A DNA stretch of 64,000 nucleotides, from positions 62,001 to 126,000 of the IMG/VR virus record IMGVR_UViG_3300037042_002125. One strand, written 5' to 3'. The notes under the pieces are model-generated. The model was given only the letters and a program-made list of their open reading frames with translations. It was not told where the DNA came from and did no database searches. The stretch's first letter is position 1, and each line of letters opens with the position of its first letter. The position numbers and the translations under genes were made by a program. This document shows, piece by piece, positions 7,631-34,699 of the stretch.

Positions 7631-7717
7631 ACGATTTTCCTTATCCCCGTAGGGTTGTTGATGATAAATAAAACACTTCGTTGCAACGAGAAACGTTTAT
7701 CTTGCTTCTCACCTATT

Positions 7718-7725
7718 ATTTACAG
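7718..7725 (-). promoter_or_regulatory. phage promoter-like motif (AA)CTGTAAAT(A); also 8837, 15770, 26848, 28010, 32499, 34690 (-) and 35023, 44712 (+)
   Basis: recurrent exact 8-mer, intergenic or at gene ends, oriented with the downstream unit. Confidence 0.65.
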
Positions 7726-7764
7726 TTTGAAATAAATCAAATTTCCGATTCTTTGAGTCTCCTT

Positions 7765-8778: not shown

Positions 8779-8845
8779 TTGTTGTTCTCACTACCCTAAT
8801 TTGTTGAGCATTAAATTAACAATGCTTTCATCTTCTATTTACAGT

Positions 8846-9169
8846 TCAGAGTTTTGTTCTGATAGCTTTGATAAGATTTGCTATTCGTAATCTCCAAGAG
8901 GACTCTTGGCTATCTATTTTTGTAGACTCAGGAAATTCAGGGAATGGCGGGAAATCAGGCAGCTTATCACCAGGCTTTGCTGCCTCCATCAACTTGGAGC
9001 GGAGTGTGCGTACCTCTGCAATCAGATAGAGCACATCCTCGGCACACTGTGTCTTCGGCTGACTCAGTCCACGCCATATGTTGCTTGCCCTTACTTGCAT
9101 CTCTTGCAGCCGAGGTTCATCGAGCACAGGCCGGCGTGGGCCACCTGGGCGTAGTTTTGTGGTATTCAC
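8846..9169 (-). CDS. hypothetical protein
   Basis: 107-aa ORF, GTG start with AGGA RBS. Confidence 0.6.
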   Translation of the reverse strand: MNTTKLRPGGPRRPVLDEPRLQEMQVRASNIWRGLSQPKTQCAEDVLYLIAEVRTLRSKLMEAAKPGDKLPDFPPFPEFPESTKIDSQESSWRLRIANLIKAIRTKL

Positions 9170-11764: not shown

Positions 11765-11842
11765 TGGTGGGACGTGTAGGACTTGAACCTACGACCAATG
11801 GATTATGAGTCCACTGCTACTGACCAACTGAGCTAACGTCCC
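11765..11842 (-). tRNA. tRNA with CAT anticodon, probably tRNA-Ile2 (lysidine type) rather than Met
   Basis: GGGACGT/ACGTCCC acceptor, GTGGA-CTCATAA-TCCAT anticodon arm, GGTTCAAGTCC T-arm, encoded CCA. Confidence 0.93.
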
Positions 11843-12159: not shown

Positions 12160-12321
12160 TTCAGTTTCCTTTGGGTTGGTTTACTAGCAGGGAATTTTGA
12201 TGTTTGGTTAAGGGTTCCGATTGCATCGCACAGTGTCCGCCAACAGGGCGGCCTGTGCCTACGCAATCAACTCATTCTATTTCGGCGGTTACGCATAATT
12301 CACCCCGAGTTTGTGCGCTTT

Positions 12322-12720
<399 letters not shown>

Positions 12721-12756
12721 CACCACAACCATATGAAGGTCAAGTTAGACTTACCC

Positions 12757-12826
12757 TTCTCAAAGTACGCTAGGAGAGAATGTACCAAATCAAGTATGCA
12801 AGATTTGGCCTAACGTGCTTTGAGAA
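12757..12826 (-). ncRNA. structured ncRNA D (unknown)
   Basis: terminal stem TTCTCAAAGCACGTTAGG/CCTAGCGTACTTTGAGAA plus inner CCAAATC/GATTTGG hairpin. Confidence 0.55.
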
Positions 12827-12829
12827 AGA

Positions 12830-12994
12830 TAGTGCCACAGTTGGAAAACATTCCTAGCCCCGATCATCTGTCTTGCGACAGACGCCTTACTATCAAAAGC
12901 CTAAATTTCTCACGTCTAGACAATGATCTCTCTTAATGTAGGCTCACCGACCTGAGACAGGCCGACTCTCAAACGCTCTCCAACTGTGGCACTA
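12830..12994 (-). ncRNA. structured ncRNA C (unknown)
   Basis: perfect 16-bp closing stem TAGTGCCACAGTTGGA/TCCAACTGTGGCACTA; TCTGTC-GCAA-GACAGA GNRA hairpin. Confidence 0.65.
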
Positions 12995-13371: not shown

Positions 13372-13375
13372 CTAT

Positions 13376-13624
13376 TTACAATTTGAGCTCATTGCAGATT
13401 GCACTGACAAGGTCTGTCCATGTTTCAATTTTGGCACAAACTTTATCGCTCAGTTCAATGTTGAATCTCTCTTCGAACTCCATAACAAGCACAATCAAAT
13501 CCAGAGAGTCTGCACCACTCTCTGAGATATTCTTATCAATCCGAATTTGATCTTTAGCCACACCTAAGTGTTCTGCTATGGTAGTATGGACACCCATTAC
13601 AATGTCCGACTTGGTAAGTATCAT
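13376..13624 (-). CDS. acpP: acyl carrier protein
   Basis: 82 aa with GADSLD phosphopantetheine site and MEFEERFNIEL helix. Confidence 0.9.
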   Translation of the reverse strand: MILTKSDIVMGVHTTIAEHLGVAKDQIRIDKNISESGADSLDLIVLVMEFEERFNIELSDKVCAKIETWTDLVSAICNELKL

Positions 13625-13807
13625 CTACTTCTCCATATCTACACACATCAACAGTGATGTAAACAAACGTTCTACTTTTTTACGATCACGTTTCCACAGC
13701 TTACGGGCCTTTCCTGGTGGCGGTGCACAGCAATTACACTTCCACCCACCTGGGCCAATAGACTTGTGGTTCATAACCTTCCGGTAGAACGCCTTTTCAG
13801 TTTGCAT
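13625..13807 (-). CDS. small basic Cys-containing phage protein
   Basis: IGPGGWKCNCC motif; AGGAG RBS. Confidence 0.65.
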   Translation of the reverse strand: MQTEKAFYRKVMNHKSIGPGGWKCNCCAPPPGKARKLWKRDRKKVERLFTSLLMCVDMEK

Positions 13808-13986
13808 GAAATCTCCTTGAAGTTAATCATCGCTTCATGGGATTCTCCTTAAGTTGGATTGGATTGAAATGCAGGAACACTAAAAATAGTGTTTACATAA
13901 AGAAAAATGCAGTTTACGCTACTGCAAAACGTAGTCAAAAGTTGACGTTAAACGTCAACAAAGTAGGAGAACTATAACTTTTACTA

Positions 13987-14568
13987 TTAGGCCTTTGGCA
14001 AGGTCACACCGACCTGACCTTGGTACTTACCACCGCGGCTGGCGTAAGTCGTTTCGCACTGCTCGTCGCTTTGGAAGAACAACATTTGGGCGCAGCCTTC
14101 GTTGGCGTAAATCTTTGCTGGCAGCGGCGTTGTGTTCGAGAACTCAAGCGTAACGTATCCTTCCCACTCTGGCTCAAGAGGAGTGACGTTGACAACAATG
14201 CCGCACCTGGCGTAAGTGCTCTTGCCCAAACAAATAACAAGTACGTCACTAGGGATAATGAAATACTCCAAGGTACGGGCCAGCGCAAAGCTGTTAGGTG
14301 GGATGATACAATATCCCTTGCCGCTAACGTCAACAAAGCAACCTTCGTCAAAATCCTTTGGATCAACAATGGTGCTGTTGATGTTGGTGAAGACCTTAAA
14401 CTCGTCTGCACACCGTACGTCGTAGCCATAAGATGATGTCCCATAGCTAATAACCTTTTTGCCTTTGTTGGCGGATCGCACTTGCCCTGGCTCAAAAGGT
14501 GCAATCATAGGTCTGAATTTTAAGCCTAGGCACTGCTCTCGAATCCATTTGTCGCTTTTGATACTCAT
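13987..14568 (-). CDS. dcd: dCTP deaminase
   Basis: [32 protein letters not shown] motifs; proteobacterial type. Confidence 0.97.
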
Positions 14569-14588
14569 GATGTTTTGTTCCTATCTGT

Positions 14589-14849
14589 TTAAATTCTTGC
14601 ATTATGACCAATTGCCCAAACAATAACAAGCCCAGAGCAAATAAACAATGCAAGGGTTATTAACGACACAATAGGAACAGCGGCTTCAAACGCGGGGCTA
14701 GGAGCAAGCCAGCCAAAGTACCAAGCAATTGGTCCTGATAGACCAAAGCTTGCCGATACGTATGCCATTACTTTAGCAAAAGGTATTACCCACCATAGTG
14801 GTGTATTAAAGTCTCCGTGGTATGGAATTTTTGTGTTCATGAGTTTCAT
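14589..14849 (-). CDS. membrane protein
   Basis: two hydrophobic segments. Confidence 0.6.
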   Translation of the reverse strand: MKLMNTKIPYHGDFNTPLWWVIPFAKVMAYVSASFGLSGPIAWYFGWLAPSPAFEAAVPIVSLITLALFICSGLVIVWAIGHNARI

Positions 14850-14850
14850 G

Positions 14851-15123
14851 TCAGCCGCCTATGTAAAAGTCAGAAGGTTTCCGATCAGGTTGGAACAACG
14901 TCTCTGCCGCAAGGGCGACGTTGCATTGCATGTCCGAGAACGATGCGTCAGCGTTCTGCGTACCGCGCAGGAACCCAACGACCTTGTGCATTGTGTCATG
15001 CAGGTACGCCTCAAAGCTCACGCCGCTGGTTGGCTGGTTGGTGTCTGCAAAGTATTTATGGACGGCGCCTGTGACGAACCAGAGCAAATGCGTGTGATCG
15101 TATTGGGGACTAGGTTGTTTCAT
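14851..15123 (-). CDS. hypothetical protein
   Basis: ATG 15123 with AGGA RBS. Confidence 0.6.
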   Translation of the reverse strand: MKQPSPQYDHTHLLWFVTGAVHKYFADTNQPTSGVSFEAYLHDTMHKVVGFLRGTQNADASFSDMQCNVALAAETLFQPDRKPSDFYIGG

Positions 15124-15150
15124 AAAAAGTTCCTGGTTAAAGTTCAGTAA

Positions 15151-15762
15151 GAGAAAACAAAAGAGAGAACATAGACGCTTTTCGTACCACTTCATCTTTC
15201 GAAGCCCACCTTAGTGGTTCGTGGTCTGGACTATGCCTTAACCAATCATGCCGCACAGCTAATGCGGTTAGGCTTTTCTGATAAAGAAATCCCTACATGA
15301 CTTGAGGTCCGCGCCGTCTAGTCTCTACACCTTCCCAAAATTTTAGCTTTGGGCTTGGCTCGGCGTTATCATATATCAGTACGTCACATTCTCTGCTCCA
15401 TAAGGAGACTGGCTAGTTACGGTTTTTGATGTGGCCGCCCAGCGGATGCCAACAACCGGTGACTGTGGAAACTGTTATTACCACCTGACTTAGAGTTCGC
15501 CGAATTTGACGCGATTCACCTTCCCCCTAATTTACCTACCTACTATTTTTCAAGTAGCTGCAGGTTTTTCGAAGGGACATTTTATACGCCTTTCGGTTGC
15601 GTTCTTCAATCCTAGGAAATCAACGGCTGGTGAGTTACACACCAGCGGTTAGGCCCTGTCGTGACTTCTGCGGATTTAACCCAAACGCATTTTTCGTAGA
15701 TGCACAATTATCTCCTTGAGGAGTCTATCAATGTACGCCTATGTTCTCACTTTTGTTTTCTC
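15151..15762. repeat. 27-nt inverted repeat arms (15151-15177 and 15736-15762)
   Basis: GAGAAAACAAAAGTGAGAACATAGGCG vs CGTCTATGTTCTCTCTTTTGTTTTCTC: 25 WC pairs, 1 G:U, 1 mismatch. Confidence 0.9.
15183..15585 (-). ncRNA. group I intron ribozyme core, IC3 Azoarcus/tRNA type; no host gene seen; 5' boundary uncertain (15585 or 15734)
   Basis: CGCGTC-AAATTCGGCGAA (P3/P4), AACGCCGAGCCAAGC (P4/P6), GAAGGTGTAGAGACTAGACGGCGCG (P7/P3), AAGGCATAGTCC (P7), P9 ACCAC/GTGGT, candidate terminal G at 15183. Confidence 0.9.
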
Positions 15763-15788
15763 ACTATCTATTTACAGTTTGAGCAAAA

Positions 15789-16172
15789 CTAGCTCTTTGG
15801 CTCAAGCCCTTCTATGTTAAGGACCTGACCTCGTAATAATCTAGCTCTCATTTCAAAATCCTCGCACTCACGTTGCTCTGTGTTCGTGCGATGTTGCAGT
15901 TTGCGAATACGTGCCGCGATCTGCTCAAAATCTTCAGCAGTGCCAGTCAATACCTTTACCGCCGCGTCTAAGCCTGCTTGGTATTGATCCTTGCGATTAT
16001 CAGAAAGTATCTTGATAATAGCTTTGATAAAGGAGCGCAAGCCTTTAGGGCTGAACCCATGAGTGGTGTACCCGCTAGCATCAACTTTGCCATAGCCAAA
16101 GTCCTCATGCTTAACTGCCAAGGCCTCAATTTGCTTAACAGTGATTATGCGAATCGGATAAATGGTTTTCAC
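15789..16172 (-). CDS. hypothetical protein
   Basis: 127-aa ORF with GGAG RBS. Confidence 0.65.
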   Translation of the reverse strand: MKTIYPIRIITVKQIEALAVKHEDFGYGKVDASGYTTHGFSPKGLRSFIKAIIKILSDNRKDQYQAGLDAAVKVLTGTAEDFEQIAARIRKLQHRTNTEQRECEDFEMRARLLRGQVLNIEGLEPKS

Positions 16173-16375
16173 GTTTCGTCTCCTCTTGAGTTAATCTCCT
16201 CAGCCTTACGCAGGCGCTTGTTATCATTTTCAAGGTCAGTGATCAGAGTCTTCAACGCTTGTATAGCGGCGTTGTAGGCATCAACCTTTTCTTTGGTCGG
16301 CCTTGTGTATGCCAGTCCACTTACGCAGCCGTCGAGGTCATCTATAAGCTTGGCGCCATCCTTACTGAGTAACAT
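16169..16375 (-). CDS. hypothetical protein
   Basis: 68-aa ORF with GGAG RBS. Confidence 0.55.
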   Translation of the reverse strand: MLLSKDGAKLIDDLDGCVSGLAYTRPTKEKVDAYNAAIQALKTLITDLENDNKRLRKAEEINSRGDET

Positions 16376-16390
16376 AATTTACTCCAAGTC

Positions 16391-16645
16391 TTAGCAGCTA
16401 ATTATAGAAATGGGCCTTCTCGACTCTCGCCGCATCCTACGCAAGATCGCCGCATCCTTGTCAAGGCTCGTCAAGGTCTTACGCATCTTGTCCAAAGCCT
16501 CTTCATACTCTTTTTTAGCATGATCCACCGAAGGTCCGGAACCTTGGTCCTCAAACCACCCCCAGTGCTTTGTTGCACTAACAAATTCTGCCAATAGAGT
16601 TTCAAGCCTCTTAGGCAGGACTTGGGTCTTTGATTTTGTGTTCAT
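16391..16645 (-). CDS. hypothetical protein
   Basis: 84-aa ORF with GGAG RBS. Confidence 0.6.
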   Translation of the reverse strand: MNTKSKTQVLPKRLETLLAEFVSATKHWGWFEDQGSGPSVDHAKKEYEEALDKMRKTLTSLDKDAAILRRMRRESRRPISIISC

Positions 16646-26799: not shown

Positions 26800-26870
26800 T
26801 TTGATTTCCTTCGAGTTAAAAATTATTGGTTGGTGGGTACTTAACGAATTTACAGTTTATGAGAAGTGAT

Positions 26871-27968: not shown

Positions 27969-28018
27969 CTTGTTTCCTTTGGTTAAGATTAAGGGGTTTT
28001 GCACTGTTTATTTACAGT

Positions 28019-28918
28019 TTAAACAGAAGTTAGGTTCGTGCTAATTCTTTCGAATAGAGTCAACTTCAATCTCAAATCATCTATCGAATCCGTCACAGCT
28101 TCTTGGAAAGCTTGCTCGGCTTTAGCTTCACTTACTTGTTTAGCTTTGAGCATCTGGGATAAGAACGACTTGTCAAACTCTGCAGCCTCCTGCTTGACCT
28201 TAAGCAATGCCTCTTTGGCCTTTTTCTTCTTTCCCCTAAGTCTCTCAAGTATGTTCCTCTTAGGGTGCCCGGACTTGTACTCCTCAGCCCTTTTGATCAT
28301 GTCAATAAGAACGTTGATATCACCTATCTCATACGCAAGCTTGCCTGCGTAAAATATCTCAGCTAAATAATCGTCGTTGCCATTCTTGTCAGGGTGGCAC
28401 AGAGACGACAGCTTCTTGTACAGCTTCTTAATTTTGGTTGCTGACCTCTTCTCTCTTAGCTGGGCTTTCTCGCGTTCTTTGTCATGTTCTCGTGTATTGT
28501 TTATGTGTAGCTTGATCTCCTCGTCTAAGTCACGCTCACCAGTAGGGTCCTTTATTGGGTCCATCTTTAACTGGCTGTCGTGCTTACGCCTAGCTTCCAT
28601 CAGTTGGTTTTGTAGGTCAACCAACACAGATACTTGGTCCTTGTACTTTAGTTCAAGTCCACGTATAAGAGTCATTGCCTGTGTCTGCTTTGTGTTTAGA
28701 TCATGATTTAGCTTCTGTACATCACGGGCCACCATTTCATAGCTTACAGTTTCCAAATCAATCTCGTAATCAAACACGTAGATGACGGAGGGCAAGTATG
28801 ATCCTGTGTAAGGTGATTTAGGCTTAAGTTGGTTGGTCCAGCCTTTGTGTATGAAAGACTCGTTGAGTAAGATGTTTGTGGAGAAAGGACTTGTAGATGT
28901 GCTGTAGAAAATTCCCAT
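28019..28918 (-). CDS. J-domain (DnaJ-like) coiled-coil protein
   Basis: IKKLYKKLSSLCHPDKN...AY helix-HPD-helix motif. Confidence 0.8.
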   Translation of the reverse strand: MGIFYSTSTSPFSTNILLNESFIHKGWTNQLKPKSPYTGSYLPSVIYVFDYEIDLETVSYEMVARDVQKLNHDLNTKQTQAMTLIRGLELKYKDQVSVLVDLQNQLMEARRKHDSQLKMDPIKDPTGERDLDEEIKLHINNTREHDKEREKAQLREKRSATKIKKLYKKLSSLCHPDKNGNDDYLAEIFYAGKLAYEIGDINVLIDMIKRAEEYKSGHPKRNILERLRGKKKKAKEALLKVKQEAAEFDKSFLSQMLKAKQVSEAKAEQAFQEAVTDSIDDLRLKLTLFERISTNLTSV

Positions 28919-32492: not shown

Positions 32493-32589
32493 ACTCTTAT
32501 TTACAGTTTTGCATCTTTGTAATAACCTATAGTTAAGTCAAGTAGATCTATTTTATGGGAAAGTTGGCGCTTATCTTTACCTTTGAGTG

Positions 32590-34596: not shown

Positions 34597-34699
34597 ATCA
34601 AAGTTAAAAAGGGGGCCTTCAGGATTTACACAACTGGGTATACTGTCTATAATAAGTACGTCACGTTGTGTAATATCTTTCTACCTTATATTTACAGTT

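What the first reader, a model, noticed from the sequence alone, without database searches (positions are those of the whole stretch)
15179..15740. Duplicated splice-junction words suggest back-splicing into a ~109-nt circular RNA
Seen (minus strand order): AGGCGUA (15740-15734), 40-nt hairpin, UACGAAAA (15698-15691), 109-nt structured segment, AGGCGUA (15591-15585), ribozyme core, UACGAAAA (15186-15179). Both a 5'-site-like 7-mer and the 3'-site 8-mer occur twice. The middle segment is closed by UGCGUU/AACGCA (15689-15684 with 15603-15598), placing the upstream 3'-site copy beside the downstream 5'-site copy. Known: engineered permuted intron-exon constructs use this geometry plus homology arms to make circRNA. 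Inference: this may be a natural circRNA generator or a double-splicing cassette. Caveat: P1 at the second site is weak. An alternative guide GUC just before P2 would read GAU|, which could mean a trans target such as host tRNA-Ile(GAU).
Basis: partly seen in the sequence, partly recalled or inferred. Interest (0 to 1): 0.78.

Follow-up and report, generated by a model that had tools for sequence, protein, structure and literature searches.

The report
Phage ribozyme intron released as circle
The region is one large self-splicing group I intron, sitting in a gene-less hairpin of a giant freshwater phage, that accumulates in lakes as a 547-nt circular RNA containing the whole intron; the proposed 109-nt back-spliced circle is not seen.

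Summary
Assembled RNA from four independent lake metatranscriptomes covers only 15183-15729. In two of them it carries one joint, G15183 joined to G15729. That is a 547-nt circle made by attack of the intron's terminal G, holding the "109-nt segment" contiguous with both neighbours. No 15586/15694 joint is seen, and the flanks have depth 0.

Three other giant-phage contigs carry introns of the same subfamily. All keep the two inner words inside invariant blocks (guide sequence plus J1/2, and J2/2.1). One sits in the anticodon loop of a tRNA-Met(CAU) gene (CUCAU|AA), whose exons lack the outer words. The inner words are therefore conserved junction motifs, not spare splice sites.

By homology the guide GUG (15705-15703) reads exon CAU(U). 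This puts the 5' splice site at U15730|G15729, not at AGGCGU|A, so the circle is full-length or one nucleotide short.

The host site is unusual. There is no gene. A 28-bp exon hairpin resembles an anticodon arm and lies 6 nt behind a recurrent promoter-like motif. A second phage has a hairpin of different sequence in the same arrangement.

The parts
15768..15779 (-). Promoter-like motif AACTGTAAATAG, 6 nt upstream of the 5' arm
   Evidence: AACTGTAAA occurs 7 times on the minus (coding) strand of the window and 0 times on the plus strand (about 0.25 expected per strand). All copies are intergenic. The same motif lies directly upstream of the related introns in L247 and L249. That it is a promoter is inferred, not shown.
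15730..15762 (-). 5' mini-exon: 5' arm of the clamp (15762-15735) plus loop nucleotides ACAUU. It contains the outer word AGGCGUA (15740-15734).
   Evidence: Inverted repeat I1. RNA depth is 0 here. The word is AUACGUA in L124-126.
15183..15729 (-). The intron, which is also the 547-nt circular RNA
   Evidence: RNA contigs of 4 runs cover only this span. The joint 15729<->15183 is seen in X1 (577-nt contig = 547 + 30-nt k-mer overlap, depth 18.3) and in X4.
15703..15708 (-). Internal guide sequence AUUGUG. GUG pairs with exon CA(U)U (P1, with U15730.G15705). AUU pairs with intron GAU 15729-27 and then with 3' exon AA (P10).
   Evidence: The 21-nt block ATTGTGCATCTACGAAAAATG (15708-15688) is identical in L248, where tRNA exons CUCAU| and |AAUCC fix the register. 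L249 keeps the ATTGTGCATCT part (two changes further on) and has the same CAUU|GA.
15712..15723 (-). L1 hairpin CUCC-UCAA-GGAG (GCAA loop in all relatives)
   Evidence: Two compensatory pairs in L124. The loop is GCAA in L127, L128, L149 and L150.
15691..15698 (-). Inner word UACGAAAA, part of the conserved J1/2 linker between P1 and P2
   Evidence: CUACGAAAAA in the window and L248, CUACGAAAC in L247, CUGCGUAAAA in L249.
15598..15689 (-).
   Evidence: The closing helix covaries in four lineages. The interior is the most variable part of the intron.
15581..15599 (-). Invariant J2/2.1 block CAACCGAAAGGCGUAUAAA, containing the inner word AGGCGUA (15591-15585)
   Evidence: Identical in the window, L247, L248 and L249 although the flanking helices differ.
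15522..15577 (-). P2.1 domain
   Evidence: MFE helices. Invariant within the window lineage.
15187..15514 (-). Catalytic core P3-P9, with large P5 and P8 extensions. P3 15514-08/15315-09; P4 15504-498/15365-59; P6 15353-47/15340-34; P7 15323-19/15233-29; P9 15224-21/15190-87.
   Evidence: Rfam alignment. The 18-nt J6/7-P7-P3 core is identical in more than 120 viral contigs. P7 covaries in L247: GACUA/UAGUC becomes GACUU/AAGUC.
15179..15186 (-). Outer word UACG|AAAA. Omega-G is G15183, and the 3' splice site is 15183|15182.
   Evidence: G15183 is the joined nucleotide of the circle. The homologous GGUACG| ends restore a tRNA in L248 and a capsid reading frame in L052.
15151..15182 (-). 3' mini-exon: AAAA plus the 3' arm of the clamp
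   Evidence: RNA depth is near 0 beyond 15183.
15121..15123 (-). ATG of the downstream 90-aa gene (RBS AGGA at 15134-15131)
   Evidence: Public 114-aa gene calls start at ATG 15195 inside the intron.

Best explanation
This is a single ORF-less group I intron of 547 nt (15729-15183, minus strand). It belongs to a small subfamily found in giant-phage contigs. Its ancestral home is the anticodon loop of tRNA(CAU), the same type of site as the Azoarcus tRNA-Ile intron. Here there is no tRNA. The intron sits in the loop of a 28-bp hairpin that resembles an anticodon arm (loop ...CAUU|AAAA...), 6 nt behind a recurrent promoter-like motif and about 60 nt ahead of a small gene. The guide AUUGUG (15708-03) pairs with exon CA(U)U and with the first intron nucleotides GAU (P1, U15730.G15705). 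It can then pair with the 3' exon AA (P10). The exon arms clamp the two splice sites together. The terminal G15183 attacks the phosphodiester U15730|G15729 and closes the intron into a 547-nt circle, which is by far the most abundant RNA from this part of the phage in lake metatranscriptomes. The two inner 'splice-site words' are conserved single-stranded linkers: J1/2 after the guide, and J2/2.1 after the P2 domain. They are complementary to each other (UACG/CGUA) and may extend P2. Shown: the circle, its junction, the silent flanks, conservation of the inner words, and covariation of P2, L1 and P7. Inferred: the exact 5' site (to within 1 nt), exon ligation, promoter function, and any role of the circle.
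For: Circle and silent flanks: X1 and X4 come from different studies; about the same number of sampled words, ~44-45, is held from the 6-kb stretch as from the 721-nt element, so nothing else is present; 10 runs from 7 studies. Group I identity. tRNA ancestry: 92 of 122 core relatives lie in intron-containing tRNA genes. L248 is a tRNA-Met(CAT) with a 472-nt intron that shares the guide/J1/2 and J2/2.1 blocks. P1/P10 register: L248 CAU|AGUA with UAUUGUG and 3' exon AAU; L249 CAUU|GA and 3' exon AAU. A clamp is also present in L249 with an unrelated sequence. Covariation. No tRNA or ORF is interrupted; the junction codon U|AA is a stop, and the circle has no ORF longer than 43 aa in the sense direction. 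All 10+ contigs of the lineage keep the intron.
Against: No spliced-exon read was available, so ligation and the exact 5' site are not shown. Only assembled contigs were laid, so there is no strand information, no local depth, and rare forms are lost. P1 in the window and L249 needs one bulged U. RNAalifold on close variants alone prefers another P1 (U15735.G15703). The 5' end of L247 could not be fitted to the model. Rfam scores the intron below its gathering threshold. The anchored shuffle (p=0.0006) leaves the coincidence of the outer and inner words not fully explained.
Confidence: 0.8

Rival explanations
1. Both inner words act as splice sites, and U15586 attacks 15695|15694 to give a 109-nt exon circle (natural permuted-intron geometry), or the cassette is spliced twice.
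For: All four words exist. Their joint recurrence is unlikely in anchored shuffles. UGCGUU/AACGCA does bring the inner sites together. A 109-nt RNA would be under-represented in standard libraries.
Against: The dominant RNA keeps 15729-15183 contiguous through both inner sites, in one unbranched circular contig, and no such joint is reported. The inner words are invariant linkers in a tRNA intron whose exons lack the outer words. The 40 nt upstream hold no 3' half of an intron. The outer 5' word is lost in L124-126. The P1 hairpin at the second site is absent in L247, L248 and L249.
Confidence: 0.03
2. Same single intron, but the 5' splice site is the reader's AGGCGU|A (U15735|A15734, with U.G15703), and the circle is a classical 5'-truncated L-5 circle formed after splicing.
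For: This is the lowest-energy local P1 and the RNAalifold consensus of the close variants. The Azoarcus intron makes L-3 truncated circles (PMC13168695). The ligated exons would form a perfect AAAA-capped hairpin.
Against: In L249 the two key pairs become A x G and U x U. In L248 the tRNA boundaries put the wobble on the first G of GUG, which is G15705. The exon-side pair G15739-C15699 is broken in L124.
Confidence: 0.15
3. There is no productive splicing. The element mainly follows the circularisation pathway: hydrolysis at the 3' site, then omega-G attack on the 5' site. This cuts the leader off the downstream mRNA and releases a full-length circle. On this view the element is an RNA-processing or circular-RNA gene rather than a passive intron.
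For: By homology the junction joins omega-G to the first intron nucleotide, which is the signature of full-length circles. There is no host gene to restore. The arrangement of promoter-like motif, clamp and intron recurs in L249 with a different arm sequence. Only the circle is detectable in RNA.
Against: An L-1 circle formed after normal splicing fits equally well. A stable circle next to unstable mRNA also explains the silent flanks. No 5'-end or exon data are available.
Confidence: 0.25
4. The joint is an artefact: reverse-transcriptase template switching, an assembly error, or a tandem DNA duplication.
For: Only contigs were seen, and metagenomic joints can be spurious (tool caveat).
Against: The same exact joint is found in two studies, with 159 and 28 nt on the shorter side. 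It lies precisely at the conserved terminal G. All DNA contigs are collinear without duplication. DNA contamination would also cover the flanks, which have depth 0.
Confidence: 0.03

Closest known systems
[quoted passage not shown]
   Same: Insertion next to CAU in an anticodon-type loop; guide GUG reading CAU with a U.G wobble; short P10; omega-G; self-circularisation (PMC13168695). The relative L248 here is exactly such a tRNA intron.
   Different: 547 nt against 205 nt (added L1 hairpin, 92-nt P2, P2.1, large P5 and P8 extensions). The host is a bare hairpin, not a tRNA. The circle is full-length or L-1 rather than L-3.
Full-length intron circles of nuclear group I introns (Didymium, Naegleria; PMC6274462, PMC3679873)
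   Same: Omega-G joined at or next to the first intron nucleotide; a stable circular intron RNA accumulates.
   Different: Those interrupt rRNA genes of protists. Here the host is a phage non-coding leader, and it is not shown that the exons stay unligated.
Engineered permuted intron-exon (PIE) circRNA constructs with homology arms
   Same: Complementary arms flank a group I ribozyme and bring the reacting ends together; a circle results.
   Different: The intron is not permuted, and the circle is the intron, not the insert. The arms are the exons.
Clostridioides difficile c-di-GMP-dependent group I ribozyme in a 5' UTR (reviewed in PMC3984707)
   Same: A bacterial-type group I ribozyme in a non-coding leader upstream of a gene, with a structured domain 5' of the core.
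   Different: No known aptamer is present (no Rfam hit at E<=10). P2 is the least conserved part. No evidence for alternative 5' sites or for creation of an RBS.
Phage capsid-gene group I introns of the same core family (for example L052)
   Same: Identical J6/7-P7-P3 core and the same GGUACG| 3' end.
   Different: About 200 nt, with a compact P1. They interrupt and restore a Phage_capsid_2 reading frame.

Membership tests
Group I intron | Match to the curated covariance model at its gathering score | tested here: not met
   RF00028 scores 43.8 bits against a gathering score of 50 (E=2e-9). L124 scores 43.1. The large insertions depress the score; the short relatives L091, L008, L052 and L095 score 50.8-74.9.
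Group I intron | Conserved catalytic core P3-P9 homologous to proven introns, supported by covariation | tested here: met
   The 18-nt core is identical in more than 120 viral contigs, and 92 of 122 lie in intron-containing tRNA genes. P7 and P2 covary. Of 173 modelled pairs, 15 vary and 10 of those stay canonical.
Group I intron | 3'-terminal guanosine (omega-G) acting as nucleophile | tested here: met
   G15183 is covalently joined to G15729 in RNA contigs of two studies.
Group I intron | 5' splice site after a U in a U.G wobble of P1, formed with an internal guide | tested here: met
   U15730.G15705, inferred by homology with L248 (the tRNA boundaries fix the register) and L249, and matching the circle junction. 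It needs one bulged U, and the site is not proven by exon reads.
Group I intron | Guanosine-initiated two-step splicing with exon ligation | not testable with these tools
   The flanks have depth 0 in all four runs. No spliced or intron-less contig was found.
tRNA anticodon-loop intron | Host is a tRNA gene | tested here: not met
   ARAGORN with intron search finds no tRNA around the window element, L247 or L249. It does find tRNA-Met(CAT) around L248.
   15734-15695 is the P1 3' strand plus the L1 hairpin. A complete, unpermuted core lies downstream.
   Not among the joints of 4 runs. The X1 contig passes both sites unbranched. Contigs cannot prove absence.
Full-length intron circle | Omega-G joined to the first nucleotide of the intron | tested here: inconclusive
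   True if the 5' site is 15730|15729 (favoured). The circle would be L-1 if the site is 15731|15730, and L-5 if it is 15735|15734.
Riboswitch-controlled (allosteric) group I ribozyme | Recognisable ligand aptamer coupled to alternative splice-site choice | tested here: not met
   No Rfam family other than Intron_gpI matches within the element at E<=10 over 14500-16500 (the only other hit, RF_site6 at E=9.4, lies outside it). P2 is variable. Only one RNA form is seen.

The most novel reading that the evidence does not exclude
The phage keeps a gene-less 'mini-exon' cassette: promoter-like motif, an anticodon-arm-like clamp, and a large ribozyme. Its real product would be an abundant, stable, non-coding full-length circular RNA. 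Alternatively or additionally, its self-cleavage would set the 5' end and fate of the downstream mRNA. Either way this would be a domesticated group I intron working as a circular-RNA gene or leader switch, conserved as an architecture (not as a sequence) in at least two giant-phage lineages.
Probability: 0.22. Interest if true: 0.75.

Novelty: new variant of a known kind. Interest (0 to 1): 0.55.

Why it matters
Reviews describe bacterial and phage group I introns as residing in tRNA, rRNA or protein-coding genes, where splicing hides the insertion (PMC3984707). Here an intron of tRNA(CAU) ancestry survives with nothing to restore. It sits in a hairpin that keeps only the few nucleotides and the stem the ribozyme needs, right behind a promoter-like motif. 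Its circular form is the one RNA of this phage region that shows up in lake metatranscriptomes from seven studies. This gives a natural, testable case for three questions: what intron circles are for, whether ribozymes are co-opted as leader-processing devices in giant phages, and which natural clamp designs favour circular RNA production. It also warns that viroid-like or circular-RNA screens of metatranscriptomes will pick up DNA-encoded phage intron circles, and that gene callers start the downstream gene inside the intron.

Tried and rejected
1. Intron-less or spliced alleles were not found. Searches used both flanking proteins, cluster members and exact-protein contig look-ups. Every contig of the lineage carries the intron.

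2. The single metagenome scan, with the 5' arm as pattern, returned only L124 again plus chance hits. L133 and L145 looked like an empty hairpin but come from unrelated phages.

3. The genome-contig scan gave only chance 17-27-mers. The viral scan with the 3' splice-site 15-mer hit only coding sequences by chance.

4. A tandem duplication of the 5' module (AGGCGUA...CUnCGAAAAA) was considered. The alignment score is reached by 53 of 500 shuffles. The second-site P1 hairpin is absent in L247-L249, so the idea was dropped.

5. GCGUUU (15688-83) as guide for AGGCGU was rejected, because those bases form the covarying P2 closing helix.

6. AGGCGU (15591-86) as a P10 guide for 3' exon GCGUCU is not conserved in relatives whose exons differ.

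7. Pairing between the intron and the downstream RBS (15585-73 with 15134-22) is weaker than in shuffled controls.

8. Coding capacity of the circle: none.

9. Read-through of the upstream TAG: blocked by further stops.

10. An intrinsic terminator or sigma-70 promoter at the hairpin: nothing above background.

11. Literature search found no description of gene-less hairpin-hosted phage group I introns or of their circles in metatranscriptomes.

Full report
**The observation.** On the minus strand, AGGCGTA lies at 15740-15734 and 15591-15585, and TACGAAAA at 15698-15691 and 15186-15179. Between the inner copies lies a structured segment closed by UGCGUUU/GAACGCA. Downstream, Rfam finds a group I intron core at 15595-15198 with 43.8 bits and E=2e-9, just under the gathering score of 50. 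It is missed at default thresholds.

That repeat is unique and is the strongest in the 64-kb window.

No ORF or tRNA is interrupted. The upstream ORF stops at 15789, and the downstream gene starts at ATG 15123-15121. Repeated 7- and 8-mers are common in the element. With the splice-site words held fixed, however, both recur in only 0.06% of dinucleotide shuffles, or 4.3% under a lenient definition.

**Direct RNA evidence.** The window is identical to a 222-kb IMG/VR contig from fresh water.

Ten metatranscriptome runs from seven studies hold up to 63% of the sampled words of the 721-nt element. About the same number of words (~44-45) is held from the surrounding 6 kb, so the element is the only RNA of this region in those assemblies. 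Not even the phage tmRNA is present.

I laid the contigs of four runs from four studies on 15000-15900. Coverage was confined to 15183-15729, and both flanks had depth 0. That rules out DNA contamination as the source.

One joint was reported: 15729 joined back to 15183. In X1 it lies in a 577-nt contig, which equals 547 nt plus the 30-nt overlap expected of a circular assembly path (depth 18.3, 159 nt on the shorter side). In X4, a different study, it lies in a 151-nt contig.

On the RNA strand, G15183 is followed by G15729. G15183 is the G of UACG|AAAA, so this is the intron's terminal guanosine closing the RNA onto its own 5' end. That is the classical group I circularisation chemistry. Contigs cannot prove that a rare or very short species is absent.

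**Close relatives.** More than ten contigs of the same phage lineage carry the element (L124-L128, L148-L154). No intron-less or spliced copy was found.

The intron is 96.5% identical between the window and L124. All differences fall in peripheral elements and none in the core. The differences fit the fold:
- two compensatory pairs in the small L1 hairpin;
- U.G to C-G in the P2 closing helix;
- wobble-compatible changes in P2.

In the L124/L125/L126 lineage the outer 5' word reads AUACGUA, so the 7-mer duplication is not conserved.

**Family.** The 18-nt J6/7-P7-P3 core occurs unchanged in more than 120 viral contigs. Of 122 contexts examined, 92 are intron-containing tRNA genes, 47 of them tRNA-Leu(UAA). 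Most of the others interrupt a capsid gene, where the boundaries ACGGU| and GGUACG| restore a Phage_capsid_2 frame. These short relatives pass Rfam's threshold. None shares the 5' 370 nt of the window intron, and none has flanking arms (score 44 here against 24 or less elsewhere).

**The decisive comparison.** Patterns taken from the invariant 5' part found three more giant-phage contigs:
- L247, from a 249-kb contig;
- L248, from a 170-kb contig;
- L249, from a 282-kb contig.

All four lineages share two conserved blocks, although the helices between them differ (alignment A5). One is the guide plus J1/2, ATTGTGCATCTACGAAAAATG (15708-15688). It is identical in L248, has two changes in L249, and is more diverged in L247. 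The other is J2/2.1, CAACCGAAAGGCGTATAAA (15599-15581), which is identical in all four.

These blocks contain the two inner words. The P2 closing helix between them covaries: UGCGUU/AACGCA, UGCAUC/GAUGCA, UGAG/CUCA, UGCGU/ACGCA. P7 covaries in L247.

L248 is a bona fide tRNA-Met(CAT) gene with a 472-nt intron in the anticodon loop, CUCAU|...GGUACG|AAUCC. Its exons contain neither outer word. The inner words are therefore structural linker motifs of the subfamily, not spare splice sites.

They are complementary to each other (UACG/CGUA). The one change seen, UGCG in L249, keeps pairing (A-U to G.U). They may stack on P2, but this remains weakly supported.

**The 5' splice site.** In L248 the tRNA boundaries fix the register. 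Exon CAU pairs with GUG, with the wobble on the first G. Intron AGUA pairs with UAUU. The 3' exon AAU can pair with AUU (P10). This is the same logic as in the Azoarcus tRNA-Ile(CAU) intron.

L249 and the window both read CAUU|GA opposite the same AUUGUG. With one bulged U this gives:
- C15733-G15703
- A15732-U15704
- U15730.G15705
- G15729.U15706
- A15728-U15707
- U15727-A15708

The predicted cleavage, U15730|G15729, is exactly the junction seen in RNA. The circle is therefore full-length, or lacks one nucleotide if U15731 is the wobble partner.

I keep it as a rival at 0.15. In that case the circle would be an L-5 form, comparable to the L-3 circle of Azoarcus (PMC13168695). Under either reading there is one intron and one circle.

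**The host site.** After intron removal the window exons fold into a 28-bp hairpin with loop ACAUU|AAAA. L249 has the same arrangement with unrelated arm sequences (UCGAAUCG/CGAUUCGA plus an outer stem, loop AAUCAUU|AAUA). The structure, not the sequence, is conserved. It resembles an extended anticodon arm that keeps CAU and the following As.

Six nucleotides upstream of the 5' arm lies AACTGTAAATAG. AACTGTAAA occurs seven times on the coding strand of the window and never on the other strand (about 0.25 expected per strand). Every copy is intergenic, and several are followed by small hairpins. The same motif directly precedes the introns of L247 and L249.

I infer, without 5'-end data, that this is a phage promoter. 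The cassette would then form the very 5' leader of a transcription unit. Gene neighbourhoods differ between the phages; only a dCTP deaminase is shared.

The splice junction creates U|AA, a stop in the frame of the downstream gene. The circle has no ORF.

**What it does.** Shown: a DNA-encoded ribozyme RNA is closed by its terminal G into a 547-nt circle that outlasts every neighbouring transcript in natural samples. Inferred: guanosine-initiated splicing and exon ligation, which would leave a 5'-terminal hairpin on the mRNA.

A real alternative (0.25) is that the circularisation pathway dominates. In that pathway the 3' site is hydrolysed and omega-G then attacks the 5' site, so the exons are not ligated. 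The element would then cut the leader off the downstream message while releasing the circle. This would make it a processing device or a circular-RNA gene. The full-length junction, the absence of any gene to repair, and the conserved promoter-clamp-intron architecture point that way, but they do not prove it.

**Comparison and novelty.** The chemistry and fold are those of known group I introns of the tRNA(CAU)/IC3 type. Intron circles have been known for decades. What is new is the context: a large ORF-less intron kept in a gene-less anticodon-arm-like hairpin in a phage leader, seen in at least two lineages, with environmental evidence for accumulation of the circle. Reviews list only tRNA, rRNA and protein genes, plus the C. 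difficile riboswitch-ribozyme, as bacterial hosts (PMC3984707). My searches found no description of this arrangement. I rate it a new variant of a known kind, with interest 0.55.

**Limits.**
- Only one read-laying run was available, and it used contigs. There is therefore no strand information, no local depth and no rare forms.
- The 5' end of L247 could not be fitted.
- The resemblance of the outer to the inner words remains partly unexplained. The 3' UACG is a family-wide terminus, and AAAA is the anticodon-loop-like exon. The exon AGGCGUA is lineage-specific and probably chance.

Noticed in passing
window 12321-12751 (-) and 11765-11842 (-); L124 6123-6458: The phage encodes a two-piece (permuted) tmRNA (Rfam tmRNA_permuted 85 bits; beta_tmRNA 70.6 bits, below its threshold; tag ANDENFRMVA) next to a tRNA-Met. 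It is conserved in the relative L124. The betaproteobacterial type hints at the host group. It does not appear in the RNA contigs that hold the intron circle.
   Followed up: partly
window 7716-7727, 8835-8846, 13372-13383, 15768-15779, 26846-26857, 28008-28019, 32497-32508, 34688-34699 (all minus strand): A recurrent intergenic motif AACTGTAAATA(A/G), strictly on the coding strand and often followed within a few bases by G(U)GA(G/A)A and a small hairpin. It is probably a phage promoter, and it is shared with the phages of L247 and L249.
   Followed up: partly
window 14851-15195 (-); proteins P0004, P0005: Public gene calls give the downstream protein as 114 aa, starting at ATG 15195 inside the intron (in P9) and reading in frame through the 3' splice site. 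The real product is most likely the 90-aa form from ATG 15123.
   Followed up: yes
L052 2712-2923 and about 15 other IMG/VR loci (e.g. L005, L009, L021, L060, L101): Short introns with the same core interrupt a Phage_capsid_2 major capsid gene at ...DFNT|V|KALVQGE.... Splicing at ACGGU| and GGUACG| restores the frame.
   Followed up: partly
L001 (LR756511.1, 595-kb uncultured phage) 824-1610: A tRNA-Leu(UAA) gene with a 700-nt group I intron carrying an HNH endonuclease ORF. Rfam finds no intron there, because the ORF insertion breaks the model.
   Followed up: partly
window 15243-15316 as seen in run X5: A lake RNA contig of a related intron has the P8 extension (72 nt) replaced by 25 other letters and a different P9 region. 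Further natural variants of this intron family are therefore transcribed.
   Followed up: no
window 13987-14568 (-) against L124 4622-5203: The dCTP deaminase is 99.5% identical in protein between the window and L124, while the neighbouring genes are 62-89% identical and the NUDIX gene is replaced (28%). The region is a mosaic.
   Followed up: no
window 12752-12994: Two 23-nt inverted repeats (83-87% complementary) lie immediately upstream of the tmRNA gene. Their role is unknown.
   Followed up: no
L247 13556-13570 / 14269-14283 and 13639-14330: A related intron lies between divergent genes in a 249-kb phage contig. Its guide reads UUGGGGC instead of UUGUGC, and neither its 5' splice site nor its clamp could be assigned. 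It may be a degenerate or differently targeted copy.
   Followed up: partly
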